The notes under the pieces are model-generated. The model was not told the origin of the DNA. It saw only the letters and a program-made list of their open reading frames with translations, and did not search any database. Made by a program: the position numbers and the translations under genes. A stretch of DNA of 64,000 nt from Octopus sinensis (lineage: Eukaryota), in NCBI RefSeq assembly GCF_006345805.1, contig NC_043015.1:12400001-12464000 (forward strand), in the 5' to 3' direction. Shown in pieces: positions 3,451 to 54,084 of this stretch (within the stretch, counting starts at the first letter, position 1; the number at the start of each line of letters is the position of its first letter).

Positions 3451-3865
3451 TATTTCTTTACTGCCCAGAAGGGGCTAAACATAGAGGGGACAAACAAGGA
3501 CAGACGAAGGGATTGAGTCGATTATATCGACCCCAGTTCGAAACTGGTACTTTATTTATCGACCCCGAAAGGATGAAAGGCAAAGTTGACCTAGGCGGAA
3601 TTTGAACTCAGAACGTAACGACAGACGAAAATACCTATTTCTTTATTACCCACAAGGGGCTAAACACAGAGGGGACAAACAAGGACAGACATAGGTATTA
3701 AGTCGATTACATCGACCCCAGTGCGTAACTGGTACTTGATTTATCGACCCCGAAAGGATGAAAGGCAAAGTCGACCTCGGCGGAATTTGAACTCACAACG
3801 TAACGCAGACGAAATACCGCTAAGCATTTCGCCCGGCGCGCTAACGTGTCTGCTAGCTCGCCGCC
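3451..3865 (-). mobile_element. Tandem pair of family C tRNA-derived SINEs
   Basis: Two adjacent copies, each starting TATTTCTTTA(C/T)T.CCC on +. The - strand reads a B-box-like GTTCTGAGTTCAAATTCC followed by GCCTTTCATCCTTTCGGGGTCGATAAA. Confidence 0.85.
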
Positions 3866-4501: not shown

Positions 4502-6518
4502 GTGTGTATGTTTGTGTGTCTGTGTTTGTCCTCCCCTCCAACATCACTTGACAACCGATGCTGGTGTGTTTACGTCCCCGTAACTTAGCGGTTCGGCAAA
4601 AGGAGACCGATAGAATAAGTACTAGGCTTACAAAGAATAAGTCCTGGGATCGATATGCTCGACTAAAGCCGGTGCTCCAGCATGGCCACAGGAAATAAAT
4701 AGAAGGATGTACCCACACATCAGGGAAATGTATATTGACCCAAAATTTTGGATCTTTTCGGTTTGAACGGCAGTTTTTTCTAGCGGTATCATATGAAATT
4801 GTCACCCATAATTATGACCCTTGTATCGATCTATTGCATTTGTAACGAACTTGATGGGTGAGTCCTCGTGCACTTTTGGGGTGCACAAAGCAATCATTAG
4901 CCGTTGCTTTAATAATCCAGAATTCCACCAGTCAGAAACAACAAGACGCAGACGTAAATAATATATATACTACTTTATTCTCTTTCTTGGTAACAGTAAC
5001 AATAAGTGGTTATCTGATGTCCTTGGTTCTGGGCGCGCAAGGCTGAAAGTTAATCGATTGTAATATTTACAATGTTCAGCCGCTAAAAACAGAACGGGTT
5101 AAAGATGGCGTCCGGAACAGGGAAGATGAATGTGGTCGGCAACAATTTGGTGAAAACCTTCGGCCGACTGCTATCAGAGCTGGACAGCGAGAAAAATATA
5201 CGTCCGTCGCCTTCGGTCGCTGCCGTCCCAAGTCCCCGCTGACTGCTGCCAGTGGTCAAACGTTCTACGACCCCCTTGCCTCGCTAACTGCCACGTAGAC
5301 AAAAGGGTTCTTCCGGTGGTTCGCGCATGCGCGAGAGGGCCCTTCCCCGCACGCGCGAAACAGAAATGGACGGTGCGCGCGCGCGCACCGTTATAGGGTC
5401 ACTACACATTTAAATCTGTTTTAGGGTTAGGGGTTGGGGGAAGGGTATCTTTTTTCTTCACAAATGTAAATAAACCCAATCTGTTCCTTAAACGAGGGAC
5501 ATATTCATACGGCACAGAATGTTTTTTTTACCTCAATAGACGTCAGTGATTGGTTGAAATTGCAGAAATTGAAGAAAAAAACAACAAATATCTTACAAAC
5601 TATAGAATTTTCTCAAGAAATCCAAGAGAAAAAGATGTTTTATAAACACATTCTACCAGTATACAAAGTTTAAAATTTTTTAGTTACCTAGAAATTATGT
5701 TAAAAACTGCCGTTCAAACCGAAAAGATCCCGTTTGTTTTTGAGCTGTCTTAAAAAAAATTTGGGATCTTTTCTTTTTGAAGGCCAGATTTTCTGAGTTA
5801 ACTAAAAAATTTGAAACTTCGTATACTGGTAGAATGTGTCAAAAGAAAACATTATTGTAAACAAAATTGAAAACAAAATTGTTATTCGTAACTTAAACGT
5901 AGTTTAATTTTTGCGAATTTTAACCAATGAAATCCCAACATCTTCGAATTTTAACCAATGAAATCCCAGCATTGCTGCGTTATCGATATTGATAAAGAAA
6001 TATAGCAGACGCACCACACACACACACACACACACATTTGCACAAGCACATAGTAATTAATATATAAGCGTACACACACATACAAACGGACATATACACA
6101 CACATACACACACACACACACACATAGTAATTAATATATAAGCGTACACACACATACAAACGGACATATACACACACACATACACACACACACACATAGT
6201 AATTAATATATAAGCGTACACACACATACAAACGGACATATACATATACGCACACAAGCAAAAATACACGTTCGTGTTTTGCCACTTGCCGCAACAAATT
6301 TGCACAAAAGGTAAATAAACCAGAAGTGGGGGGTCAATGTTTCATCGTTTCGGGGTCGATAAATTAAGTACCAATTACGCACTGGTGTCGAGGATTTTTT
6401 TCCCAATTTATATCACAGCTTCCGACAAGCTGGGGGCATCCTTTTATGAAAAAATATTTCGCAAATTTTTACGATAGTACTCACACTCCACGCGCAAACT
6501 CGAGACCGATTTAGGCAT
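3866..6518 (-). CDS. Candidate spliced gene of unknown product (exons 6518-6485, 4232-4138, possibly 4030-3866; 97 aa)
   Basis: AATAATATG start; donor GAGT|gtgagt; acceptor ttgcaag|; donor AAG|gtaatt; acceptor ggttaaag|. Phases are compatible (1, then 0), giving MPKSVSSLRVELKYLWHEQPFSRREPHETWLVIKRTAQLKTLK-LKIPGSSSEF...FLQI*. No recognisable homology. Confidence 0.27.
4280..4691 (+). mobile_element. Family A tRNA-derived SINE with internal (TG)n
   Basis: GGAGTGGCTGTGTGGTAAG head, GTGGCACCTTGGGCAAGTGTC core, (TG)n, GGTGCTCCAGCATGGCC tail. Further copies or fragments at ~14280-14625 (-), 16705-16900, 19560-19980 (-), 23353-23748, 31555-31720, 32300-32512, 36517-36700, 54644-55088, 57764-58154. 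Confidence 0.9.
4750..5730. mobile_element. Foldback/MITE element with 28-bp TIRs, interrupted by a solo LTR
   Basis: GGATCTTTTCGGTTTGAACGGCAGTTTT at 4750 and its exact reverse complement ending at 5730. The interior matches 8219-8879 in reverse orientation. Confidence 0.8.
4841..5406 (-). mobile_element. Solo LTR (566 bp) with 4-bp TSD CATT, probably Ty3/gypsy type
   Basis: TG...CA termini (TGTAACG...ACTACA); CATT on both sides (4837-4840 and 5407-5410); AATAAA on the - strand near 4975; GC/CpG-rich relative to the flanks. Confidence 0.8.
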
Positions 6519-8965: not shown

Positions 8966-9186
8966 GGAGGTTTTCCAGCGCGGCCACCTTTTCAAACTAT
9001 TGTGGTGAATTGTTTGGGTTTTTTTCTTTTTTTTTATTTCTCTCTTTTTACTTTTAATTTTTTTTTCACTTGCGTTCTCTGTTTTGTCTAATTTTCTAAT
9101 TTAATTTTGTAAAGCGGTAAACACTGTGAAAGTTAATAAGTTCGTGTAATGTTTGAGGTGAATGTTTATTAAGCGAAATTGCAGAC

Positions 9187-9211
9187 CCGGAAGTAGAATC
9201 AGGTCACGTCA
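9187..9211. promoter_or_regulatory. ETS-type CCGGAAGT (9187-9194) and TGACGTGA on the - strand (9204-9211), just upstream of the caspase-like ATG
   Basis: Exact motif matches in a short CpG-containing stretch. Function untested. Confidence 0.3.
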
Positions 9212-9225
9212 CTGCTATAATCGCA

Positions 9226-10074
9226 ATGACGGCCGATAACACTCTATATAAAAGTAAACTTATAACAAGTGGTCGTTCTTCAAGGGATGAAGATTTGTTG
9301 AAATATTTTGATAAATATGACATGACACATAAAAAGCCAGGTGTTGCCTACATCTTCAACAATGAAAATTTCAGAGACCCATCACTAAATACTCGTCATG
9401 GCTCATCAAAAGACGTACAAGATTTTAAAAGAGCATTATTAGGACTTGGATTCCATGAAACTGATATCCATGTTTATACAGATTTAACAGCGATCGAAAT
9501 GCTCGATACTTTGCAGATGTTTGACCAAGATAATCCTGACATTGATATTGATAGCTTTATTTGTGTGATTCTGAGTCATGGTAGTTCAGGCGATATTATC
9601 TATGGATACGACGATGTTATTGAACTAGACAAATTACTTTCTTGCCTGAGACCCGATCGTTGTCCATCTTTAAAAGGAATACCTAAATTAATCTTCGTTG
9701 AAGCCAGTAGAGGAAATAAGCTTGATTATGGAGTTGAAACCTCGGATGCTGCTTTCGAGGAACCGGATCAAAAGCCATCCCAAATTCCAATTATGGCTGA
9801 TATGTTGATCGCTTATTCGTCGTTTGCTGGATATCAATCTTTCAGGGATAAAAAGAGAGGTTCGTGGTTTATGCAAGGTCTAAGTAAAATTTTGATAGAA
9901 TATGGCACCAAATACGAAATCATGAAACTTTTAACTGCTGTGTCTAATTATGTTGCCGCTTTAGAACCCCCAAGTTTGCGTAATTCGGTATACGCTGGCT
10001 GTAAGCAAATGCCTTGTATTACATCATTGTTGACTAAACAACTACAGTTTGTACGAAAGAACAAATCAGATTGA
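9226..10074 (+). CDS. Single-exon effector caspase-3/7-like protein (peptidase C14 fold), predicted inactive (catalytic Cys->Ser)
   Basis: 282-aa intact ORF with YDMTHKKPGVAYIFNN, R57-HGS..D, ILSHG (His118), KPKL-like PKLIFVEASRG in place of FIQACRG, IP..ADMLIAYSS, SFR207...GSWFMQ, KQMPCITSLLTKQL. Short N-terminal extension, no CARD or DED. Confidence 0.92.
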   Translation: MTADNTLYKSKLITSGRSSRDEDLLKYFDKYDMTHKKPGVAYIFNNENFRDPSLNTRHGSSKDVQDFKRALLGLGFHETDIHVYTDLTAIEMLDTLQMFDQDNPDIDIDSFICVILSHGSSGDIIYGYDDVIELDKLLSCLRPDRCPSLKGIPKLIFVEASRGNKLDYGVETSDAAFEEPDQKPSQIPIMADMLIAYSSFAGYQSFRDKKRGSWFMQGLSKILIEYGTKYEIMKLLTAVSNYVAALEPPSLRNSVYAGCKQMPCITSLLTKQLQFVRKNKSD

Positions 10075-10377
10075 ATGTACATTTTTACTCTATTTTATAT
10101 ATATATATATGTTTATACGTTGCTCATTTAGTATTCATGATATCATTTCTCGACATAACTACAGATTTCTGGGTGGAACTGGACGACAGTCCCCGCCCAC
10201 ACACACCACACACACACACAACCAAACTTTTAGAATTTTTTTTTTTTTCTCAGCTGATTCCTAGGTTTTCGATGACGGATAGGAAAGACTTCCACCCGCT
10301 TCTCATTCTCTCCCCCTCAACTTTTTTTAAAGGGTGTTTTTTTTTTTGGTGGCGGGTGGGGGAGGCAAAGTCTTTCA

Positions 10378-12047
10378 CAAAATGTTTTTGGGGAAAGTGT
10401 TTTAGGAGGGGGTGGGGTGGAGGATTTCGGAAAATTCACCGGAGTCAACTTCCAATTCGTCTTAACTTTCAAGAAAATGGATATTTTTTAATGGAATCCT
10501 CAACAAATATACTTCGGACTATGTAGATTACGAGGACTTATGAATTTATGGGAAAAACAAAAGCAATGGGGGGGGGGTATTTTTGAGAACAGTTCCCCAC
10601 TCGGAGGTGTTTCGGAATAAGTCGTCCATATTTGTTTCTTTTTCTCCGTTTTGTGCGTTTGTGCATACACACATGTGGCGAAGTTTCGCATGTCGTAGCT
10701 CAGATTTCCGTCGATTTCCGTAAAAAACTTTTATTTTTTTACGTAAGTAATGAGAGCGAAAGAGACTAAGAGGAAGCGATTTTATGACGAGGGAAGTTTG
10801 TCTTTGAAGTTACCGTCTAGGGGAAGCATTGATGTACATGTGTGTGTGTGTGTGTGTTTGATGGGGTGTGGGAGACAGTATGTTGTGTAAGTGAAGTGCT
10901 TCTGTTAGTGTGTGCGAAGAGACAGAGAGAGTAATGTGTGAAAGAGAGAGATAACTGATTTTTTACTCGGTGTATGTGTATATGTATGTATGCATGTATG
11001 TGTGTGTGTGTGTATGTATCTATGTATGTGTGTGTGTATGTATGTATGTATGTGTGTGTGTGTGTAAGTATGTGTGTGTGTATGTATGTATGTATGTATG
11101 TGTGTGTGTGTATGTATCTATGTATGTGTGTGTGTGTATGTATGTATGTATGGCCGATTCATCGTAATTTTTTACTCGGTGTATGTGTATATGTATGTCT
11201 GTCTCTTCGCACACTAACAGAAGCACTTCACTTACACAACATACTGTCTGTCTCCCACACCCCATCAAACACACACAGGCCGACTTCAAAGAGAAACCAT
11301 CTCGTCGTAAAATCGCTTCCTCTTAGTCTCTTTCGCTCTCATTACTTATGTAAAAAAATAAAAGTTTTTTACGGAAATCGACGGAAATCTGTGCTACTAC
11401 AACCGAAACTATACAACCGAAACTATGCCACACATGTATATGTAATAAAAAAATGTTCAAAGGGGGAATTATTCCATTCAATATCATGTTTGTTGTAGAG
11501 ATTATGTAACAAATTATACTTTACACTTCTATATTCAACTGTGCGTGTATATTCCTTATTTTTGCTTCTGGTGTATTCTACATTTCTATTAGAAACGTCT
11601 ATTCAGGAATTTACTTAAAGCGAAAAAGGAATTGTATGCAACAGATAAGTTGTCTTAATAATATATTTTTGTGTACCAGACCTTTAGCTGTTATTTTTAG
11701 CATAACGAGTTTTCTGGTGAGGGCTTCATTTGCCTTCATTTCCTGTTTGTTGCTTCAATAGAAATCTACGGATGCACAAACGCACAAAACGGAGAATATG
11801 AAACAAATATGGACGACCTGTTCCGAAACACCCCCGAATGGGGAACAGTTCTCAAAAATAACCCCAATTGTTATCCCCCAAAACTCTTATGTCCTCGGAA
11901 TATACATAATCCGAGGTATATGTGTAGAGGATTCCATTAAATATCCATTTTCTTGAAAGTTAGGACGAATTGAAGTAGACTCCGGTGAATTTTCCGAAAT
12001 TCCTCACCCCACCCCCTCCTAAAACACTTTCCCCAAAAACATTTTGT
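10378..12047. mobile_element. ~1.7-kb compound foldback directly downstream of the caspase-like gene
   Basis: 10378-10666 is inverted against 11770-12047, and ~10670-10935 against ~11190-11440. The centre is (TGTA/TG)n microsatellite. The inner part matches the MITE at 34152-34589. Confidence 0.8.
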
Positions 12048-15990: not shown

Positions 15991-16902
15991 GAGTGAAATT
16001 GTGAATGCAAATGTAACAAACTACAGTAATTGTAAAATATTTTTGTAGATTAAAGGTGAGCATATTGTGACCTTCAAGAGTTATGTTTCTTGTTGTGTGG
16101 CTTAAGTACTGAAATACTTTAACTTAAATACACAAATTTTGAAAACTGGAGATGATAGAAGATTAATTCTGGAACATAGAAGTTAAAATCACACTGAAAA
16201 TAGAAAATAAAAAAGTTAATGTAACTTTTTTTAAAGGTATAGGCTTCCCAACCGCATGGTTCTGGGTACAGTCCCACTACGTGGTACCTTGGGTAAGTGT
16301 CTTCTACTATAGCCTTGGGCCAACAAAGCCTTGTGTGTATATTTGGTAGATGGAAACTGAAAGAAGCCCATTATGAGTCTGGTGCAGCCATCTGGTTCGC
16401 CAGTCCTCAGTCAAAATCGTCCAACACATGCCAGCATGGAAAGCGGATGTTAAACGATGATGATGATGATGATGATGTATGTTATGACAATGATGATGAG
16501 TGAAACTGCCAACATCTCTGTTTCGTGAAAAATCTCCCCATGACCACCACCACTTTACAGGTTTTGGATGTACTTATGAAAGGACAAATGAGAGGATCAA
16601 CAAGGTCTGTTTTATACATGTAACTCCAAAGACTTGGTCTTGGTTTGTATGAGACTATTGATGATGATGCCAATTATAGCAACGTAATAATTTTTTCTAC
16701 TATAGGCGCAGGAGTGGCTGCATGGTAAGTAGCTTGCTCACCAACCACATGGGTCTGGGTTCAGTCCCACTGCGTGACACCTTGGGCAAGCGTCTTCTAC
16801 TATAGCCTCAGGCCGACCAAAGCCTTGTGAATGGATTTGGTAGATGGAAACTGAAAGAAGCCCATCGTATATATGTGTGTGTGTATATATATATATATGT
16901 AT

Positions 16903-18425
16903 GCCGGTGGCACACAAGAAAACCATCCGAACGTGGCCGTAGCCAGTACCGCTTCGACTGGCCATCGTGCTGTGGGCACATAACAAACACCATCCGATCG
17001 TGGCCGTTCGCCAGCCTCATCTGGCACCTGTGTCGGTGGCACATAAAAACACCATCCGAAGACCCGGCAAGACTAGTCAGGCCATAACCCGTGGCCCCTA
17101 CCTGGGACGTAGTCAGTCCACCTGTGCATACCTTCCTTCTTGTGACACTTGTGAAGACCTGTTGAGGCAAGTGAAAATCAAAATCAAAATCAAAACAAAT
17201 CAAAATAGATGAACATCAATGGAATTTGTATCTTTGTGGTACCAGTTCCGGTGGCACACAAGAAAACTATCCGAACGTGGCCGTAGCCAGTACCGCATCG
17301 ACTGGCCATCGTGCTGTGGGCACATAACAAACACCATCCGATCGTGGCCGTTCGCCAGCCTCATCTGGCGATGTGTCGGTGGCACATAAAAACACCATCC
17401 GAAGACCCGGCAAGACTAGTCAGGCCATAACCTGTGGCCCCTACCTGGGACGTAGTCAGTCCACCTGTGCATACCTTCCTTCTTGTGACACTTGTGAAGA
17501 CCTGTTGAGGCAAGTGAAAATCAAAACAAATCAAAATAGATGAACATCAATGGAATTTGTATCTTTGTGGTACCAGTGCCGGTGGCACACAAGAAAACCA
17601 TCCGAACGTGGCCGTAGCCAGTACCGCATTGACTGGCCATCGTGCTGTGGGCACATAACAAACACCATCCGATCGTGGCCGTTCGCCAGCCTCATCTGGC
17701 ACCTGTGTCGGTGGCACCGCATTGACTGGCCTCCGTGCTGTGGGCACATAACAAACACCATCCGATCATGGCCGTTCGCCAGCCTCATCTGGCACCTGTG
17801 TCGGTGACACATAAAAACACCATCCGAAGACCCGGCAAGACTAGTCAGGCCATAACCCGTGGCCCCTACCTGTGCATACCTTCCTTCTTGTGACACTTGT
17901 GAAGACCTGTTGAGGCAAGTGAAAATCAAAACAAATCAAAATAGATGAACATCAATGGAATTTGTATCTTTGTGGTACCAGTGCCGGTGGCACACAAGAA
18001 AACCATCCGAATGTGGCGGTAGCCAGTACCGCATCGACTGGCCTCCGTGCAGTGGGTACGTAACAAACACCATCCGATCGTGGCCGTTCGCCAGCCTCAT
18101 CTGGCACCTGTGTCGGTGGCACATAAAAACACCATCCGAGCGTGGCTGTCTGCCAGCCTCGTCTGGCACCTGTGTCAGTGGCACATAAAAAACACCATCC
18201 GAGCGTGGCCGTTCGCCAGCCTCGTCTGGTACCTGCGTCGGTGGCACATAAAATCACCCACTACACTCTCGGAGTGGTTGGCGTTAGGAAGGGCATCCAG
18301 CTGTAGAAACACTGCCAGATCTGACTGGCCTGGTGCAGCCTTCGGGCTCCCCAGACCCCAGTTGAACCGTCCAACCCATGCTAGCATGGAAAGCGGACGT
18401 TAAATGATGATGATGATGATGATGA
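16903..18425 (+). repeat. Higher-order tandem array of ~60-65-bp monomers inside a composite SINE
   Basis: The block CCGGTGGCACACAAGAAAACCATCCGAA restarts at ~16903, 17248, 17578 and 17983. Monomer is approximately GTGGCACATAAAAACACCATCCGA.CGTGGCCGTTCGCCAGCCTC.TCTGGCACCTGTGTCG. It begins after a family A head and ends in a family B (GAT)n tail. Confidence 0.9.
18250..18425 (+). mobile_element. Family B SINE with (GAT)n tail
   Basis: ACCCACTACACTCTCGGAGTGGTTGGCGTTAGGAAGGGCATCCAGC...CATGCTAGCATGGAAAGCGGACGTTAAATGATGAT. Other copies at ~22645-22800 (-), 23215-23300 (-), 30030-30200, 40190-40360 (-), 40730-40990, 42600-42770, 46855-47010 (-), 57440-57645, 59190-59370 (-), 60005-60290 (-), 61300-61455. 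Confidence 0.9.
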
Positions 18426-32520: not shown

Positions 32521-34075
32521 AATAATAATGAAATTATTGTATACAGTGCTCAGGTGCACCACAACCTGTCAAAAGTGCTTATAAAGCGTATGCAGTAATG
32601 TACAAATGTCTGGAAAGTGAACAGTGTTTGAGTCAGATACATGCTTGCGTGCGTATGGAGGGGAGAAAATCAGTGTTGGCAAAACTAAGGAAGCATGAAA
32701 GTTTTAAAGGACAACTAACAACTGATGCCGGCAGTTTGTTCCATACTTCAGCAACTCTTAGCGTGAAAAATGTTTCCGAAAGTCATGGGAGCTGTGCTGT
32801 TTTCTGACTTTGTAAACATGTCAACGGGTGTTAGACAGTTGGTGTTTGAAAAGGTGCTCAGAGTTATTGTTTGTAAGATGGTTAATAATTTTATGGGTGT
32901 CTGCCAGACGTCGGAGTTTCAATGTATCCATGCCCAAGGAAGTAAGGTGTTCAGAATATGGCAAATGCCTGATGGAGGATATCCTCTTGGTTGCACGTCG
33001 CTGAACGGTTTCCAGGCGATTAATATCTTGGGCAAGATAGGGGTTCCAGACCGGTGATGCATATTCCAGGTGAGGCCGTGCCATAGCTATATAAAGCCTC
33101 AGATAGATAACCGGAGAACGACTCACAAAGGACTTGGTAAGTGATGCCAAGGCACCCTCAGCCTTCTTGGCAATTTTAGTAATGTGTTGTGTCCAACGCA
33201 AATCGCTGTCGACAATAATGCCCAGGTCATGTTCACAAGAAGGCATTTTGAGATTAGTGCTGCGGAGGGAGTAAGTAGACGCTGGGGTTTTCCTCCCAAA
33301 ATGCATGGTGGTACATTTGTCCACAGCCAGCTTGAGTTGCCAGTCCATGATCCACTGCTGCATTGTGTCCAGGTCTGATTGCAATAAAGATCTGTAGTGT
33401 ACAGGATCTGTCCTCTTTATTTCGAGATACAGCTTAATGTCATCTGCATATTTCAGCACTGTGGTATTCTTCAAGTTCTATGTCGTTAACATATGCAATA
33501 AATAAAAGGGGGCTAAGAACAGATTATTGTGGTACACCAGATGTCATCTCATAGGGTGAAGAGTGCTGTCCTAGAACTGTGACAACCTCTTTTCAGCCGA
33601 TAATGAAGGACTTCAACCAGTTATAGAGATCATCTCTTACACCGATTGCAGAGAGTTTCACCATAAGTCTTTTGTGTGGCCCAGAATTAAAAGCCTTAGC
33701 AAAGTCTAGGTAAACAACATCCACCCAGGAGCCACCATCAGTGATTCGGGTAATGTCCACAAAAAACTCGATGAGTTGATTACAGCAGCTGGAGTTAGGA
33801 ATAAATTCAAATTGTGACAGCTGGATGATGCTGTGAGACTTCCAGAAGTTCCAGAGAGTTTCTCTAAAACAGGATTCCATCAGTTTGGCGATGCAGCTAA
33901 TAAGACTGATGGGGCGATAGTTGACAGGCGATGTGCGGTCACCTTTTTTGAACAGAGGGATAACACTGGCAGTTTTCCAATGCTCTGGAGTAACACCATT
34001 GTCAAGACAGAATTGAAAGAATAGTGAAAGTTGGTTTAGAAGAAAGTACCCATCGAGACCAGGAGAGGCATAGTT
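32521..34075 (-). mobile_element. 5'-truncated CR1-type LINE (RT and C-terminus, frameshifted)
   Basis: VVYLDFAKAF, LKYADDIKLY, RPHLEYASPVWNPY, LETVQRRATKRI; (ATT)n-like 3' tail at ~32521. Confidence 0.9.
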
Positions 34076-43654: not shown

Positions 43655-45156
43655 TATATATGTATTTATGTGTTTCTGCAAAGTGTGCTGGAGCACCACC
43701 ATGACTTTCCCTCCTTATGCTGTGCTCTTTACACGTTCCTTGCATGGCTCTTCTCCACCACCTGATGTAGTCCAATCAAGACTTTCGATGGCACATCTGG
43801 TGTATAAGAGAATTTAACATCACTGCCCTCAGCTGTGTCTCATTTCGAGCCATTGGTTCATCTGGTATCATGGATAGGAAAGTGTCGAGTTTTGTTTCGA
43901 AGACCTCTATATCCATGTCTTGCAGGTCTCTCAATTGTTTTGGCAGGGCATTAAAGAGCTGAGGTCCTCTGAAACCGAGGCTGTTACAGTACCTTGTTCT
44001 TATATGAGATGCAGTGGACAGTACCCTTGGTACTATGCAGTGGCAACCTGTGCGGGCATTCGTGTAATACTTGATGCCAAAGTTTGGTACCAGTCCTTCC
44101 AGTATTTTCCATATGTAAATTATTACATATCTCTCCCACCTGCGCTCCATGGAGTAGAGCTTTAGTGCTTTCAGTCGCTCCGTGTAGTTCATCTACTGGT
44201 CTGTGGTGATCTTTTTTGTATAGTGACGCTGAATTGCCTTGAGTTCTGTGGTCAACTTGACACTGTGTGGTGACCACAACTGGGAGCAATAGTCTAGGTG
44301 GCTCAAAACAAATGTCTGACATAGAGTCAACATGACTTTTTGATCTGATCCCTTGTTCTGAAAGTTCTCAGTATCCACCCTGCCAGTTGTCTGCACTTTG
44401 CTGTCAACTTGACAATGTGCATGTGAAATGATGCATCACTACACTTGCTGATGCCCAGGTCTCTCACTGTTTGTGGTTCTGGGATTGCAGTACCTCCAGG
44501 TCCTGTGTATGCCAGTTGGGGGGCACTTGTGGCCTTGTAGAGCAGTACTTGAAATTTTTTATCATTGAACTGCATATATTGCATTTTGGTCATTCTGCAG
44601 GCTTCTTCATTGCCTGAGATAGTTTAGTGTCATCAGCGTAGCTAGTGACAATGGCTGTCTGAGTGACTGGGGGCATGTCCAGAAGGGCTACTATGAACAG
44701 TAGTGGTCCCAGGACAGTTCCTTGTGGAACACTGCTCAATATTTGCGTTTCCCTAGATAATTCTCCATTGGCTGCAACTGTCTGACTTCTACCATCCAGG
44801 AAGTCATGCAACCACTCTCCTAATTTACCATCTTTGCCAAGGTTTTTCAGTTTGTGACATATCATGCCATGATCAACTTTGTCAAAGGCTTTTGCAAAGT
44901 CGAGATATATCACGTCAACATTTGAATGGTCAAGTAGCTGCCCCAGGACCCAGTCATAATGGACGGAAACCATGCTGGGTCTCATTCAGCAAGTCATTTT
45001 CTTCTAGGAACTCAATCACCTTCCTTCTGACAATTTGTTCCGAGACTTTGCTAATATGTGAAGTCAGATAGATGGGCCTGTATTCCCAGCCTCTGCTCTG
45101 TTTTCACCTTTGTGGATAGGACATATGATCCCTTCCTTCAGCTTTTCATATATATT

Positions 45157-45230
<74 letters not shown>

Positions 45231-46730
45231 GTATTTATGTGTTTCTGCAAAGTGTGCTGGAGCACCACCATGACTTTCCCTCCTTATGCTGTGCTCTTTA
45301 CACGTTCCTTGCATGGCTCTTCTCCACCACCTGATGTAGTCCAATCAAGACTTTCGATGGCACATCTGGTGTATAAGAGAATTTAACATCACTGCCCTCA
45401 GCTGTGTCTCATTTCGAGCCATTGGTTCATCTGGTATCATGGATAGGAAAGTGTCGAGTTTTGTTTCGAAGACCTCTATATCCATGTCTTGCAGGTCTCT
45501 CAATTGTTTTGGCAGGGCATTAAAGAGCTGAGGTCCTCTGAAACCGAGGCTGTTACAGTACCTTGTTCTTATATGAGATGCAGTGGACAGTACCCTTGGT
45601 ACTATGCAGTGGCAACCTGTGCGGGCATTCGTGTAATACTTGATGCCAAAGTTTGGTACCAGTCCTTCCAGTATTTTCCATATGTAAATTATTACATATC
45701 TCTCCCACCTGCGCTCCATGGAGTAGAGCTTTAGTGCTTTCAGTCGCTCCGTGTAGTTCATCTACTGGTCTGTGGTGATCTTTTTTGTATAGTGACGCTG
45801 AATTGCCTTGAGTTCTGTGGTCAACTTGACACTGTGTGGTGACCACAACTGGGAGCAATAGTCTAGGTGGCTCAAAACAAATGTCTGACATAGAGTCAAC
45901 ATGACTTTTTGATCTGATCCCTTGTTCTGAAAGTTCTCAGTATCCACCCTGCCAGTTGTCTGCACTTTGCTGTCAACTTGACAATGTGCATGTGAAATGA
46001 TGCATCACTACACTTGCTGATGCCCAGGTCTCTCACTGTTTGTGGTTCTGGGATTGCAGTACCTCCAGGTCCTGTGTATGCCAGTTGGGGGGCACTTGTG
46101 GCCTTGTAGAGCAGTACTTGAAATTTTTTATCATTGAACTGCATATATTGCATTTTGGTCATTCTGCAGGCTTCTTCATTGCCTGAGATAGTTTAGTGTC
46201 ATCAGCGTAGCTAGTGACAATGGCTGTCTGAGTGACTGGGGGCATGTCCAGAAGGGCTACTATGAACAGTAGTGGTCCCAGGACAGTTCCTTGTGGAACA
46301 CTGCTCAATATTTGCGTTTCCCTAGATAATTCTCCATTGGCTGCAACTGTCTGACTTCTACCATCCAGGAAGTCATGCAACCACTCTCCTAATTTACCAT
46401 CTTTGCCAAGGTTTTTCAGTTTGTGACATATCATGCCATGATCAACTTTGTCAAAGGCTTTTGCAAAGTCGAGATATATCACGTCAACATTTGAATGGTC
46501 AAGTAGCTGCCCCAGGACCCAGTCATAATGGACGGAAACCATGCTGGGTCTCATTCAGCAAGTCATTTTCTTCTAGGAACTCAATCACCTTCCTTCTGAC
46601 AATTTGTTCCGAGACTTTGCTAATATGTGAAGTCAGATAGATGGGCCTGTATTCCCAGCCTCTGCTCTGTTTTCACCTTTGTGGATAGGACATATGATCC
46701 CTTCCTTCAGCTTTTCATATATATTGGATA
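43592..46730 (-). mobile_element. Two identical 1569-bp tandem units, each a 5'-truncated CR1-type LINE plus a (TA)n(CA)n microsatellite
   Basis: ORFs repeat at +1569 (43776/45345, 44193/45762, 44590/46159) with identical translations. Motifs IYLDFAKAFDKVDH, VPQGTVLGPLLF, YADDTK, SHLDYCSQLWSP. Confidence 0.92.
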
Positions 46731-53033: not shown

Positions 53034-54084
53034 CCCTTTCGTTACCAAACCGCCCAAAGCCGCCCGAAAAAAATTTTGGTTTATGAAACCAAACCGCCCA
53101 AAGCCGCCCGAATTTACCTATTCATATTTAAATGAGAATATCAGAGCAAATCTCTTCAGTACATTCGTGAAAACACGTATTATACTTCGTAAACAGTTCA
53201 ACTACAGTTTTGTACAATAAACGAAGTGTAATTTTAATTTCGTGAATTTTGGGAGATTTTTTTCCGAAATTTGTTCCTATTGTGTTTTCAAAATTTGTAA
53301 TTCTGACAAAAAATGGATACGAATTTCATTATATCAAGCAGCGAGTCAGAATTCGAAGGATTTTCTACTGAAGACCTTCATAAATCTAACTCTATGACTG
53401 AAAAAAAAAAGCATGTGGTATTTGATAATGAATCTGATGTTTCATTTTCCGAAAGTGAAAACAGTGAATCTGAGATCTCCGATAGCGATAAAGAAAACGA
53501 ATTGGCACCTGAATGGAGTGAAAATTTAAAAACTGTTTCTTTCGGTGATTTTTCTGAAGAAACTGGACCAAGCCACAGACTTTCCCAGAAGTGTAAAGCC
53601 TTAGACTATTTCTATTTACTTTTTCGAATGAGCCAATTTGAAATCATTACAGCGAAAACGAACCGTTACGCTAAATGTAAACAAAACAATACTTTGTGGT
53701 TTCCCACAACCTTAAATGAAATTAAGACTATTTTGCCATAAATATTATTATGGGTATCAGAAAGTTACCCAGAATAACAAATTCTATCGTAAAATTTTGT
53801 TGTATACCCAATTGAATATTAGCTAATAACCCATTTTAATAATTTTATATTTTGTGGAATTTACCTGTATCTACCTGCAATTACAGTCACTTTGTGACAA
53901 AAATTATAGTATAGAATTGGTTGAGAATATTTCATTAAATTATCTTCCAAAAATCAGATTAATATATCGATAAATAAAAAAGTTATAGTTGTTTAATGAA
54001 ACCAGACTAAATTTATGATTACGTTAGAAATTAATTGAAACACATAAGGGGTGTAATTTGGTCAGAAATATAGTAACGAAAGGG
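53034..54084 (+). mobile_element. Internally deleted piggyBac element with a truncated transposase (53313-53741)
   Basis: TTAA|CCCTTTCGTTAC...GTAACGAAAGGG|TTAA; subterminal direct repeat ACCAAACCGCCCAAAGCCGCCCGAA twice; acidic N-terminus then YFYLLF...TNRYA...W.PTTLNEIK, followed by a frameshifted IMGIRKLPRI. Confidence 0.92.

What the first reader, a model, noticed from the sequence alone, without database searches (positions are those of the whole stretch)
9226..10074. Intact effector caspase whose active site reads EASRG instead of QACRG: a candidate cephalopod pseudo-caspase or decoy
Seen: a 282-aa ORF with no disablements. Catalytic His118 (SHG) is kept, but the nucleophile codon is AGT (Ser161, 9706-9708) and the adjacent S1-pocket Gln is GAA (Glu159, 9700-9702). 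Each is one base from TGT or CAA. The Asp-binding arginines R57 and R207 and a caspase-3-like linker site (GVETSD174|A versus IETD175|S) are retained. Known: Cys->Ser or Ala abolishes caspase activity, and inactive paralogs (vertebrate c-FLIP, C. elegans CSP-2/CSP-3, the Aedes decoy CASPS18) modulate active caspases. Inference: this could be a dimerisation-competent regulator, IAP sink or substrate trap. Two clustered changes in the key pentapeptide, with the rest of the fold conserved, suggest selected loss of catalysis rather than random decay. I know of no description of such a decoy in cephalopods but cannot check the literature.
Basis: partly seen in the sequence, partly recalled or inferred. 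Interest (0 to 1): 0.78.

Follow-up and report, generated by a model that had tools for sequence, protein, structure and literature searches.

The report
Octopus caspase copy lacking catalytic cysteine
This is a real, intact octopus gene for an executioner-type caspase whose catalytic cysteine has become serine, one of several such copies in an octopus gene cluster; it is very probably an inactive "pseudo-caspase" of a known kind, though not described in the papers I could search.

Summary
Window 9226-10074 (+) is an intact 282-aa effector-type caspase reading EASRG (Glu159 GAA, Ser161 AGT). His118, Arg57, Arg207 and the linker aspartates are kept.

The window is Octopus sinensis. Syntenic single-exon orthologues in O. 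vulgaris and O. bimaculoides, from independent assemblies, also read EASRG, so it is not an assembly error.

The gene is the last member of a same-strand tandem array ordered S2 (Ser), C2 (Cys), C1 (Cys), S1 (this gene). Cys->Ser arose independently in S1 and S2 (AGT versus TCT). Gln->Glu arose again later in S2.

Among the 150 best representatives, EASRG with both arginines and the histidine intact also turns up in a hemichordate and a midge. Glu at the Gln site goes with loss of Cys (6/18 versus 1/165 domains).

dN/dS between orthologues is about 1.0-1.4, so neutrality is not rejected. However, there is no stop and no frameshift, where roughly 1e-5 to 1e-3 would be expected under neutrality. 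Replacements also avoid family-conserved positions (5% versus 44%).

Best reading: a maintained, fast-evolving, catalytically dead pseudo-caspase. A regulatory or decoy role is inferred, not shown, and no expression data were available. It is a new member of a known kind.

The parts
9226..10074 (+). Single-exon coding sequence of the caspase paralogue called S1 here (282 aa plus stop). It has a p20-like and a p10-like half and no long prodomain.
   Evidence: establish the ORF, the Pfam PF00656 match (8.7e-52) and the caspase-7/-3 matches (4e-47). The AlphaFold model has pTM 0.77. Foldseek top hits are caspase-7, -3 and -6 with TM 0.84-0.90 normalised to the target. It is the only caspase-like sequence in the window (tblastn).
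9700..9714 (+). Altered active-site pentapeptide EASRG: GAA GCC AGT AGA GGA. Glu159 is at 9700-9702 and Ser161 at 9706-9708.
   Evidence: Codons were read. The pentapeptide aligns with QACRG (QAARG in the C186A crystal forms) of caspase-7. The codons are identical in the O. vulgaris and O. bimaculoides orthologues. The pentapeptide lies inside a 38-nt run identical between O. sinensis and O. bimaculoides.
9574..9582 (+). The SHG motif, with the catalytic-dyad His118 (9577-9579) retained.
   Evidence: It lies inside a 36-nt run identical between the orthologues, encoding FICVILSHGSS.
9394..9396 (+). Arg57, the S1-pocket arginine, equivalent to caspase-7 Arg87. Retained.
9844..9846 (+). Arg207, the second S1-pocket arginine, equivalent to caspase-7 Arg233. 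It is retained in S1 but lost in several paralogues.
9736..9768 (+). Inter-subunit linker with two candidate cleavage aspartates: ETSD174|A and EEPD181|Q. Both Asp residues and the Ala after Asp174 are kept in O. bimaculoides (LKSD|A, IEPD|K).
   Evidence: The linker has low model confidence, as expected for a flexible loop (residues 168-184). Whether it is cleaved was not tested.
9961..10002 (+). Residues about 246-259, which align with the L4 substrate-groove loop of caspase-7. This is a hot spot of replacement between the orthologues: 7 of about 15 positions differ.
   Evidence: The loop boundaries are taken from the caspase-7 literature and are approximate.
9226..9243 (+). A labile start region. 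O. bimaculoides has AAG where O. sinensis has this ATG, and uses a new in-frame ATG 13 codons upstream, where O. sinensis reads ATT. A 1-nt and a 10-nt indel lie here.
9092..9225 (+). Upstream leader or promoter-proximal stretch, conserved between S1 orthologues. Its last 45 nt or so are homologous among paralogues. It contains an ETS-like ACCCGGAAGT at 9185-9194.
   Evidence: CCGGAAGT occurs only once in the 64-kb window, but roughly two occurrences would be expected by chance, so only its conserved position carries weight. The motif is at the same position in the S1 genes of all three species and in the S3 contig L008. Promoter function is not shown.
10075..10191 (+). 3' flank conserved with O. 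bimaculoides; the first 30 nt after the stop are identical. No AATAAA or ATTAAA signal occurs before 11357.

Best explanation
The ORF is a genuine, maintained protein-coding gene of Octopus that encodes a pseudo-caspase. It has an effector-caspase fold, with no thiol nucleophile (Ser161) and a Glu in place of the S1-pocket Gln.

**Origin.** It arose by tandem duplication inside an Octopus-expanded array of single-coding-exon short caspases. It sits about 11 kb downstream of a paralogue with an intact QACRG.

**Proposed mechanism.** The steps below are inferred unless marked otherwise.
1. Ser161 cannot replace the thiolate of the His-Cys dyad, so the protein is proteolytically dead or nearly so. 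A precedent has been shown for a natural Cys->Ser in the caspase fold, T. brucei metacaspase 4.
2. Glu159 places a negative charge between Arg57 and Arg207. This probably forms salt bridges with them and closes the pocket to a P1 aspartate.
3. The fold, the C-terminal dimer-interface strand and the linker aspartates are kept. The protein can therefore still be cut by upstream caspases and still pair with itself or with active sister caspases.
4. It would then act without catalysis, as a dimer partner or competitor that tunes the active paralogues or their activators and inhibitors. Its recognition surfaces (L4 loop, linker, N-peptide) evolve fast.

**What is shown:** identity, fold, residue states, orthology, independent recurrence, maintenance of the ORF, and the site pattern of replacements.

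**What is not shown:** transcription, lack of activity, and any binding partner.
For: **Identity and fold.**

**Not an assembly error.** The same GAA and AGT codons occur in three assemblies of three species.

**Orthology.** The flanks are collinear with O. bimaculoides and with O. vulgaris.

**Tandem array.** Searches give the order S2, C2, C1, S1 on one strand.

**Maintenance of the ORF.**
- 99 substitutions separate the O. sinensis and O. bimaculoides copies, yet there is no stop. In simulation, P = 0.0225.
- Aligned flanks carry 12.2 indels per kb, and 40 of 52 would shift the frame. After the first 6 codons the coding sequence has only two indels, both of 6 bp.
- P(no frameshift) = 3.7e-4, giving a joint probability of about 8e-6. 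It would still be about 1e-3 if the indel rate in the coding sequence were a third of the flank rate.

**Pattern of replacements.** They avoid positions conserved among paralogues: 4/80 at conservation >= 0.9 against 27/62 at < 0.5 (Mann-Whitney p = 1e-9).

**Conservation of the altered site.** The EASRG and SHG segments are two of the three longest nucleotide-identical runs between the orthologues.

**Independent recurrence.**
- The Ser codon is AGT in S1 but TCT in S2 and TCC in S3.
- S2 is nested with 100% bootstrap support among QACRG genes.
- S2 reads CAA (Gln) in O. bimaculoides and GAA (Glu) in O. sinensis.

**Across animals.** Of 183 caspase domains in the top 150 representatives, Ser is the commonest non-Cys residue at the nucleophile position (8 domains). 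Glu at the Gln site occurs in 6/18 non-Cys domains against 1/165 Cys domains (Fisher p = 2.5e-6; p = 2e-4 if two poorly aligned cases are dropped). Exact EASRG with Arg/His/Arg intact is found in Glandiceps talaboti and Diamesa hyperborea.

**Precedent.** A natural Cys->Ser metacaspase is inactive, regains activity when Ser is changed to Cys, and is processed by an active paralogue (PMC3220528). The Aedes decoy CASPS18 enhances its paralogue CASPS19, as cited in PMC4840389 and PMC3141678.
Against: - dN/dS between orthologues is 1.0-1.4 (bootstrap interval 0.71-2.06) and neutrality is not rejected (Fisher p = 0.4-1.0). The QACRG neighbour C1 gives 0.33-0.51, and neutrality is rejected there (p = 0.01).
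- Purely synonymous differences also avoid the conserved codons (Fisher p = 0.007). Part of the 'replacements avoid conserved sites' signal could therefore be a nucleotide-level effect. I could not explain this.
- The start codon is not conserved between species.
- No transcript evidence exists. The 90%-identity cluster of this protein holds only the two genome-derived proteins and no Logan-assembled copy.
- No biochemical or interaction data exist, so the regulatory role rests on analogy.
- The flank indel rate may overstate the neutral indel rate of a non-repetitive coding stretch.
Confidence: 0.6

Rival explanations
1. A non-functional relic. After losing its nucleophile the duplicate has drifted neutrally, and its reading frame is still open by luck or because constraint was lost only recently.
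For: - pN/pS is 1.0-1.3 and neutrality is not rejected.
- Differences are spread evenly over codon positions: 36/36/27.
- The start codon has turned over.
- No transcript-derived copy is in the protein collection.
- Derived replacements hit some otherwise invariant positions in both lineages, for example Cys110Ser in O. sinensis, and Lys68Glu and Gln217Arg in O. bimaculoides.
Against: - The joint chance of no stop and no frameshift is about 1e-5 to 1e-3.
- The immediate flanks carry 4-5 indels in about 250 nt, against two in-frame indels in 828 nt of coding sequence.
- Replacements avoid conserved columns (p = 1e-9).
- The mutated active-site segment is among the most conserved parts of the gene.
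- The same EASRG state was reached independently in paralogues and in other phyla.
- Each species has kept a usable in-frame ATG despite the turnover.
Confidence: 0.17
2. A functional non-catalytic protein whose job is not to regulate caspases. It could, for example, be a binding or sensing module in immunity, as reported for some oyster caspases that bind microbial patterns.
For: - Fast evolution of surface loops together with a maintained frame is typical of immune-related genes.
- The family is lineage-specifically expanded and holds several differently degenerated members.
- Oyster caspase homologues that bind bacteria and microbial patterns are reported in the abstract of PMC12122919.
Against: There is no direct evidence of any kind. 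The protein has no added domain and consists only of the caspase domain. Retention of the linker aspartates and the dimer-interface strand fits a role inside the caspase network at least as well.
Confidence: 0.13
3. An active protease of mixed type. Ser161 would act with His118 as the nucleophile, possibly with a changed P1 preference because of Glu159.
For: - His118, the oxyanion-hole Gly, both arginines and the GSWF substrate-binding strand are kept.
- The replacement is repeatedly Ser, which is a potential nucleophile, rather than any other residue.
Against: - The one natural Cys->Ser caspase-fold protein that has been tested is inactive. That paper states that no serine-nucleophile protease with a caspase fold is known (PMC3220528).
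- Cys->Ser caspase mutants are the standard dead controls (established knowledge).
- Sister Ser lineages go on to lose His (S3) or Arg207 (S2), which is not expected if Ser were catalytic.
Confidence: 0.06
4. A sequencing or assembly error, or a processed retro-pseudogene, mistaken for a gene.
For: The coding sequence is intronless. The O. sinensis assembly has local problems nearby: an N gap and frame changes in the C1 neighbour.
Against: - Identical GAA and AGT codons occur in three independent assemblies.
- All family members have a single coding exon and lie in same-strand tandem arrays with homologous upstream leaders.
- There is no poly(A) tract after the ORF and no disablement.
Confidence: 0.01

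Closest known systems
Aedes aegypti CASPS18, the 'caspase-like decoy' paralogue of CASPS19 (Bryant et al. 2010, known here only through citations in PMC4840389 and PMC3141678)
   Same: Both are short effector-type caspase paralogues that arose by gene duplication, lack catalytic competence and are kept as intact genes beside an active sister. CASPS18 modulates (enhances) that sister. The octopus gene likewise lies about 11 kb from a QACRG paralogue.
   Different: The phylum differs and the origin is independent. The residue changes of CASPS18 could not be checked because the paper is not held. For the octopus gene, neither interaction with a sister caspase nor any effect on one has been tested.
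Trypanosoma brucei metacaspase 4 (PMC3220528)
   Same: Both are natural Cys->Ser substitutions with the His retained, in a peptidase C14 fold. MCA4 is inactive, regains activity when Ser is changed to Cys, and is processed by an active paralogue. This is the best experimental precedent for what Ser161 means.
   Different: MCA4 is a metacaspase (Arg/Lys-specific, protozoan, lipid-anchored and released), not an animal caspase. It has no equivalent of the Gln->Glu change.
Vertebrate cFLIP(L) (PMC7586951, PMC11121540)
   Same: Both are pseudo-caspases encoded next to their active paralogue. cFLIP(L) keeps the fold and works by heterodimerising with that paralogue.
   Different: cFLIP(L) is initiator-type with two death-effector domains, has lost both catalytic residues to other residues, and is recruited through adaptors. 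The octopus protein has no prodomain and keeps His.
Human caspase-7 and caspase-3 (PDB 1F1J, 1K86, 1CP3 and others)
   Same: These are the closest solved relatives: E about 4e-47, 36-38% identity, TM 0.84-0.90. They share the same p20/p10 architecture, S1 arginines, His and linker aspartates.
   Different: They are active Cys proteases with QACRG and are encoded by multi-exon genes.
EASRG caspase homologues of Glandiceps talaboti (XP_077983052.1, XP_077983329.1) and Diamesa hyperborea (CAO1443301.1, first domain)
   Same: They carry the identical pentapeptide, and Arg, His and Arg are retained.
   Different: They are only 36-39% identical to the octopus protein and lie in distant phyla, so their origin is independent. 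They are uncharacterised, automatically annotated proteins.

Membership tests
Caspases (peptidase family C14A), by homology | Significant match to the caspase domain profile across both the p20 and p10 parts | tested here: met
   PF00656, E = 8.7e-52, covering residues 39-273 and profile positions 2-232 of 233.
Caspases (peptidase family C14A), by homology | Caspase/hemoglobinase fold closest to effector caspases | tested here: met
   AlphaFold pTM 0.77. Foldseek top 50 hits are all caspase-7, -3 and -6 or Sf-caspase-1, with E down to 1e-26 and TM 0.84-0.90.
Caspases as active cysteine proteases | His-Cys catalytic dyad, with the Cys in QACxG | tested here: not met
   His118 is present, but the nucleophile position is Ser161 (AGT) in all three species.
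Caspases as active cysteine proteases | Asp-specific S1 pocket formed by Arg, Gln and Arg | tested here: not met
   Arg57 and Arg207 are present, but Gln is replaced by Glu159.
Caspases as active cysteine proteases | Measured cleavage after Asp | not testable with these tools
   This needs recombinant protein and peptide substrates.
Effector (short-prodomain) caspases | No CARD or DED prodomain, and an inter-subunit linker with Asp cleavage sites | tested here: met
   The caspase domain is the only Pfam domain and the N-peptide is about 30 residues. Asp174 and Asp181 are conserved in the orthologues.
Pseudo-caspase / caspase-like decoy | A caspase homologue lacking a catalytic residue | tested here: met
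   Cys->Ser.
Pseudo-caspase / caspase-like decoy | Maintained by selection as an intact gene, not a decaying copy | tested here: inconclusive
   For: the frame is kept open with a joint P of about 1e-5 to 1e-3, replacements avoid conserved columns, and the state is conserved in three species. Against: dN/dS is 1.0-1.4 with neutrality not rejected, and the synonymous pattern is unexplained.
Pseudo-caspase / caspase-like decoy | Expressed as RNA and protein | not testable with these tools
   No RNA-seq mapping tool was available. No transcript-derived member is in its protein cluster, which is weak negative evidence only.
Pseudo-caspase / caspase-like decoy | Binds and modulates an active caspase, an activator or an inhibitor | not testable with these tools
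   This needs co-expression, pull-down and activity assays.
Processed retro-pseudogene | Dispersed intronless copy with a poly(A) remnant and disablements, while the parent gene has introns | tested here: not met
   The gene lies in a tandem same-strand array, and every family member checked has a single coding exon. There is no poly(A) tract and no disablement.

The most novel reading that the evidence does not exclude
'EASRG' may be a recurrent, selected end-state of animal caspase duplicates rather than a one-off. It was reached independently at least twice, and probably three times, within Octopus, and again in a hemichordate and in insects. In this state Glu replaces the S1 Gln specifically after (or together with) loss of the Cys. 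The Glu would neutralise the two now ligand-less arginines and so create a stable, Asp-blind, cleavable caspase scaffold with a shared non-catalytic mechanism. The octopus array, which alternates Cys and Ser members, would be a natural system of paired active and dead caspases. A still bolder variant, that these are the first serine-nucleophile proteases with a caspase fold, is not excluded but is much less likely.
Probability: 0.2. Interest if true: 0.7.

Novelty: new member of a known kind. Interest (0 to 1): 0.5.

Why it matters
Pseudo-enzymes that regulate their active relatives are well established for caspases in vertebrates, nematodes and mosquitoes, and for metacaspases in trypanosomes. 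None has been described in cephalopods, whose cell-death machinery is hardly studied.

This gene, with its sister Ser, His-less and Arg-less paralogues, shows that Octopus has expanded a family of single-exon short caspases and repeatedly disabled members of it. Dead copies are interleaved with intact ones.

That gives a compact natural experiment on how pseudo-proteases arise. Cys->Ser comes first and Gln->Glu follows, and the same pentapeptide appears in unrelated phyla. It also provides concrete candidates for regulators of apoptosis or immunity in octopus.

The finding also matters for annotation. These proteins are labelled 'caspase-1-like', 'caspase-6' or 'caspase-7' in public records with no hint that they lack the nucleophile.

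Tried and rejected
- **Assembly error.** Rejected: three assemblies agree.
- **Retro-pseudogene.** Rejected: tandem array, the whole family is single-exon, and there is no poly(A) tract or disablement.
- **Other caspase copies in the window.** None found by tblastn. The neighbours lie just upstream of the window.
- **Gene conversion with paralogues as the cause of the conserved-site pattern.** Not supported. Synonymous divergence between S1 and its paralogues at conserved codons is 0.26-0.38, and derived changes fall on both lineages.
- **Whole-gene positive selection.** Not demonstrable: the bootstrap interval for dN/dS is 0.71-2.06. The substitution rate in the coding sequence (11-12%) exceeds that of BLAST-alignable flanks (7.6%), but alignable flanks are biased towards conserved DNA, so I did not use this.
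- **A 5'-UTR intron acceptor at 'ttgcag' (9180-9185).** Not conserved in O. bimaculoides, so dropped.
- **Literature searches.** Searches for EASRG or QASRG found nothing, and searches for octopus or cephalopod caspases found nothing that describes these proteins.
- **Failed look-ups.** P0012 and P0010 DNA are not on record, so a second Cys control pair could not be computed. Bryant et al. 2010 is not held, so the exact residues of CASPS18 could not be compared.
- **The Logan contig carrying S3 (L008).** I could not tell whether it is RNA or DNA, so it was not used as expression evidence.
- **A first tree script** timed out and was rerun with 50 bootstraps.
Full report
**1. The observation**

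Window 9226-10074 (+) is an uninterrupted ORF of 282 codons plus a stop. It is the only long ORF with coding character in its neighbourhood, and tblastn finds no other caspase-like sequence in the 64-kb window.

- Pfam gives Peptidase_C14 at E = 8.7e-52 over nearly the whole profile.
- The best solved-structure relatives are human caspase-7 and caspase-3 at E about 4e-47.
- In those alignments Arg57, His118, Glu159, Ser161 and Arg207 fall on caspase-7 Arg87, His144, Gln184, Cys186 and Arg233.
- Asp174 lies one residue from Asp198, and Asp181 aligns with Asp206.
- An AlphaFold model built on the family alignment is confident in the core (pTM 0.77). It is uncertain only at the N-peptide (residues 1-22), the linker (168-184) and the tip of L4 (251-253).
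- Foldseek returns only effector caspases, with TM 0.84-0.90 normalised to the target.

**2. Where it comes from, and whether the bases are real**

The protein is encoded on O. sinensis chromosome record CM016877.1, and the window starts at position 12,400,001. A 282-aa O. vulgaris protein with five amino-acid differences, and a 295-aa O. bimaculoides protein at 77% identity, are each encoded by a single exon.

The flanks are collinear with both species, so these are orthologues. All three read GAA GCC AGT AGA GGA. An assembly or sequencing error is therefore excluded.

**3. Genomic context: a tandem array that alternates intact and disabled caspases**

Look-ups of the paralogues place four genes on the same strand in O. 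sinensis:

| Name used here | Protein | Pentapeptide | Start on CM016877.1 |
|---|---|---|---|
| S2 | P0029 | EASRG | 12,353,458 |
| C2 | P0009 | QACRG | about 12,374,700 |
| C1 | P0017 | QACRG | 12,397,197 (about 2 kb before the window) |
| S1 | this gene | EASRG | 12,409,226 |

O. bimaculoides has the same order for the three genes I could place. P0006 (QASRG) starts at 21,783,651, P0003 (QACRG) at 21,822,334 and P0002 (EASRG) at 21,836,608.

Every family member checked has a single coding exon, including the basal P0019 on another chromosome. The last 45 nt or so before the start codon are homologous among the paralogues. Together with the absence of a poly(A) tract and of disablements, this argues for tandem duplication of a single-exon gene and against a processed pseudogene.

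The family of 22 proteins at 45-78% identity consists, in the collections searched, of sequences from the three Octopus species plus four Logan-assembled contigs whose species I could not determine. The next best relatives are at or below 43% identity.

**4. The family is full of differently disabled members**

- S1: EASRG, with Arg57, His118 and Arg207 kept.
- S2: QASRG in O. bimaculoides and EASRG in O. sinensis and O. vulgaris, with Arg207 lost (Gly or Ile).
- S3 (P0020, P0021): EASRG, with the SHG histidine and the Arg57 loop deleted.
- P0013 and P0015: QACRG kept, but His->Cys and Arg57->Cys.
- P0005 reads EACRG and P0007 reads QTCRG.

**5. Independent origins**

The Ser codon is AGT in S1 but TCT in S2 and TCC in S3. 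AGT and TCT are each one step from TGT but two steps from each other.

In a neighbour-joining tree the S1 clade (100% bootstrap) is separate from S2. S2 is nested with 100% support among QACRG genes (C2, P0008), and S3 is basal. Cys->Ser therefore happened at least twice, and probably three times.

Gln->Glu also recurred. S2 still has CAA in O. bimaculoides and has GAA in O. sinensis, so in that lineage Cys->Ser came first and Gln->Glu followed.

**6. Beyond Octopus**

In a full HMMER scan, the 150 best representatives contain 183 alignable caspase domains.

- 165 have Cys at the nucleophile position.
- Ser is the commonest alternative, in 8 domains.
- Glu at the Gln position occurs in 6 of 18 non-Cys domains and in 1 of 165 Cys domains (Fisher p = 2.5e-6; p = 2e-4 after dropping two poorly aligned cases).
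- Exact EASRG with Arg, His and Arg intact is present in two proteins of the hemichordate Glandiceps talaboti and in the first domain of a protein of the midge Diamesa hyperborea.
- EASKG occurs in one domain of a protein of the cricket Anabrus simplex.

The representatives were ranked by similarity to an EASRG query. This could favour such hits very slightly, but it cannot create the association.

**7. Is S1 under selection?**

*Whole-gene rates.*

| Pair | dN | dS | dN/dS or pN/pS | Fisher test of neutrality |
|---|---|---|---|---|
| S1 (O. sinensis or O. vulgaris vs O. bimaculoides) | about 0.13 | about 0.10-0.12 | 1.0-1.4, bootstrap interval 0.71-2.06 | p = 0.4-1.0 |
| S2 | about 0.10 | 0.15-0.17 | 0.58-0.70 | p = 0.075 |
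| C1 | 0.07-0.08 | 0.17-0.21 | 0.33-0.51 | p = 0.01 |

The non-synonymous rate of S1 is 1.6 times that of C1 (p = 0.018). On this criterion S1 looks unconstrained on average.

*The reading frame.* With the 99 observed differences placed at random, only 2.25% of simulations stay free of stops. BLAST-aligned collinear flanks carry 7.6% mismatches and 12.2 indels per kb, of which 40 of 52 would shift the frame. From codon 7 to the stop, the coding sequence has two indels, both of 6 bp, whereas the 250 nt immediately around it have four or five. This gives P(no frameshift) = 3.7e-4 and a joint probability of about 8e-6. Even if the neutral indel rate of this non-repetitive stretch were a third of the flank rate, the joint value would be about 1e-3.

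*The site pattern.* Conservation of each alignment column was scored without the S1 sequences. The S1 orthologues differ at 5% of columns with conservation >= 0.9, at 17% for 0.7-0.9, at 31% for 0.5-0.7 and at 44% below 0.5 (Mann-Whitney p = 1e-9). The three longest nucleotide-identical runs encode GTKYEIMKLLTAVSN, EASRGNKLDYGV and FICVILSHGSS, so the altered active-site loop and the His strand are among the best-kept parts. Replacements are densest in the N-peptide, the linker and the stretch aligning with loop L4.

*A caveat I could not resolve.* Purely synonymous differences show the same gradient: 0.23, 0.11 and 0.02 per synonymous site (Fisher p = 0.007). dN/dS is therefore about 1.1 within each conservation class.
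- The S2 pair does not show this gradient.
- Gene conversion with the sampled paralogues does not explain it. Synonymous divergence between S1 and its paralogues at conserved codons is 0.26-0.38, and derived changes fall on both lineages: 25, 19 and 19 ambiguous.
- The counts are small and the test is post hoc. Even so, the site pattern is not clean proof of purifying selection at the protein level.

*The start codon* has moved. O. bimaculoides reads AAG at the O. sinensis ATG and starts at a new in-frame ATG 13 codons upstream, where O. sinensis reads ATT. A 1-nt and a 10-nt indel lie in this region. Each species nevertheless keeps an ATG-initiated frame. Met33, which is invariant in the family, is a possible alternative start.

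*Overall.* The frame and the core are maintained while the surface evolves at about the neutral rate or faster. This fits a functional, fast-evolving protein better than a decaying copy, but it does not exclude recent relaxation of constraint.

**8. Mechanism**

The following facts are established by others. A natural Cys->Ser protein with a caspase fold, T. brucei metacaspase 4, has no peptidase activity. It regains activity when Ser is changed to Cys, and it is processed by an active paralogue. The same paper notes that no serine-nucleophile protease with a caspase fold is known (PMC3220528). Cys->Ser caspase mutants are routine dead controls (general knowledge). Pseudo-caspases work through pairing with active relatives, as with cFLIP(L) (PMC7586951, PMC11121540). 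The mosquito decoy CASPS18 enhances CASPS19 (cited in PMC4840389 and PMC3141678).

What follows is my inference for S1. Ser161 abolishes catalysis. Glu159 sits between Arg57 and Arg207, probably pairs with them and repels a P1 aspartate. The retained fold, the C-terminal interface strand and the linker Asp174|Ala and Asp181 leave the protein cleavable by upstream caspases. They also leave it able to dimerise, with the neighbouring C1 and C2 as the obvious partners. The new Ala N-terminus created after Asp174 could in principle mimic an IAP-binding motif, but this is speculation. The recurrent association of Glu with loss of Cys suggests that neutralising the empty arginine pair is itself favoured.

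**9. Comparison with what is known, and novelty**

By homology and fold this is a caspase of the effector type. It fails the defining features of an active caspase: no Cys, and no Gln in the S1 pocket.

It meets the sequence definition of a pseudo-caspase. Maintenance by selection is supported but not clean. Expression and partner binding could not be tested.

I found no paper that describes Ser-substituted caspases in cephalopods.
- The squid study lists pentapeptides for Euprymna only (PMC9389742).
- The lophotrochozoan and oyster studies include octopus sequences in their trees but do not comment on them (PMC11463336, PMC11543851).
- The bivalve survey reports varied active sites, but no cephalopods (PMC7836458).
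- Neither 'EASRG' nor 'QASRG' occurs anywhere in the library.

Public records call these proteins 'caspase-1-like', 'caspase-6' or 'caspase-7'.

I therefore file it as a new member of a known kind. The family-wide alternation of intact and disabled copies, and the cross-phylum recurrence of EASRG, are the parts that go beyond a routine case.

**10. Verdict**

- Interest is 0.5: this is a clear, testable pseudo-enzyme candidate in an understudied lineage with an interesting pattern of convergence. However, it lacks expression and functional data, and its average dN/dS does not reject neutrality.

Noticed in passing
L007 5001-5900 (O. sinensis CM016877.1 12,397,197 onward, about 2-3 kb upstream of the window start): The QACRG neighbour C1 (P0017) matches its intact O. 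bimaculoides orthologue only to about codon 239. It then changes frame twice, hits a stop and runs into a block of N. This is either a local assembly fault or real decay of the active-type neighbour in O. sinensis.
   Followed up: partly
Alignment A1 and the family alignment (proteins P0005, P0007, P0013, P0015, P0020, P0021, P0006, P0012): Other members of the Octopus family are disabled in different ways. P0013 and P0015 have His->Cys plus Arg57->Cys with QACRG kept. S3 (P0020, P0021) has lost the SHG histidine and the Arg57 loop. S2 has lost Arg207. P0005 reads EACRG and P0007 reads QTCRG.
   Followed up: partly
Window 9226-10074 versus L001 10001-10888: Synonymous differences between the S1 orthologues, like replacements, avoid codons at family-conserved positions (0.23, 0.11 and 0.02 per synonymous site; p = 0.007). 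The S2 pair does not show this, and gene conversion with the sampled paralogues does not explain it.
   Followed up: partly
L005 5001-5840 versus L005 26275-27100 (O. sinensis S2 and C2): The N-terminal halves of S2 and C2 in O. sinensis share a long near-identical stretch (EDFKKALIKLGFREDDIKVY...DIDCFICAILSHG), and their synonymous divergence is only about 0.15. This suggests gene conversion between a Ser and a Cys paralogue that stopped short of the active site.
   Followed up: no
Window 9185-9194, and the same position in L001, L004 and L008: An ETS-like ACCCGGAAGT lies 33-41 nt upstream of the start in S1 of O. sinensis and O. vulgaris and in S3. In O. bimaculoides S1 it lies just inside the annotated coding sequence. 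It is degenerate in the Cys paralogues and in S2.
   Followed up: partly
Window 32821-33474 (-), 43776-46554 (-), 53313-53741 (+): These are decayed mobile-element pieces. There is a reverse-transcriptase fragment at 32821-33474. Further RT fragments (44590-44985 and 46159-46554) lie inside a tandem duplication of about 1.57 kb. There is also a very weak piggyBac-like transposase match. No other host gene was detected in the window.
   Followed up: partly
Window 16902-17810, 18061-18258, 3451-3818, 6024-6256, 10971-11152: Satellite and minisatellite arrays are present (units of 331 bp, 93 bp, 62 bp, 185 bp and 72 bp), along with many (TG/CA)n-rich tracts. One (TGTA/TG)n tract lies about 900 bp downstream of the gene.
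   Followed up: no
Proteins P0057/P0181 (Glandiceps talaboti), P0053 (Diamesa hyperborea), P0033 (Anabrus simplex), P0148 (JGI contig): The same or nearly the same pentapeptide occurs in unrelated animals: EASRG, EASKG or EAGRG, with the S1 arginines kept and the histidine kept in all but the Anabrus EASKG domain (Ile). Several top representatives are multi-caspase-domain proteins that mix intact and disabled domains.
   Followed up: partly
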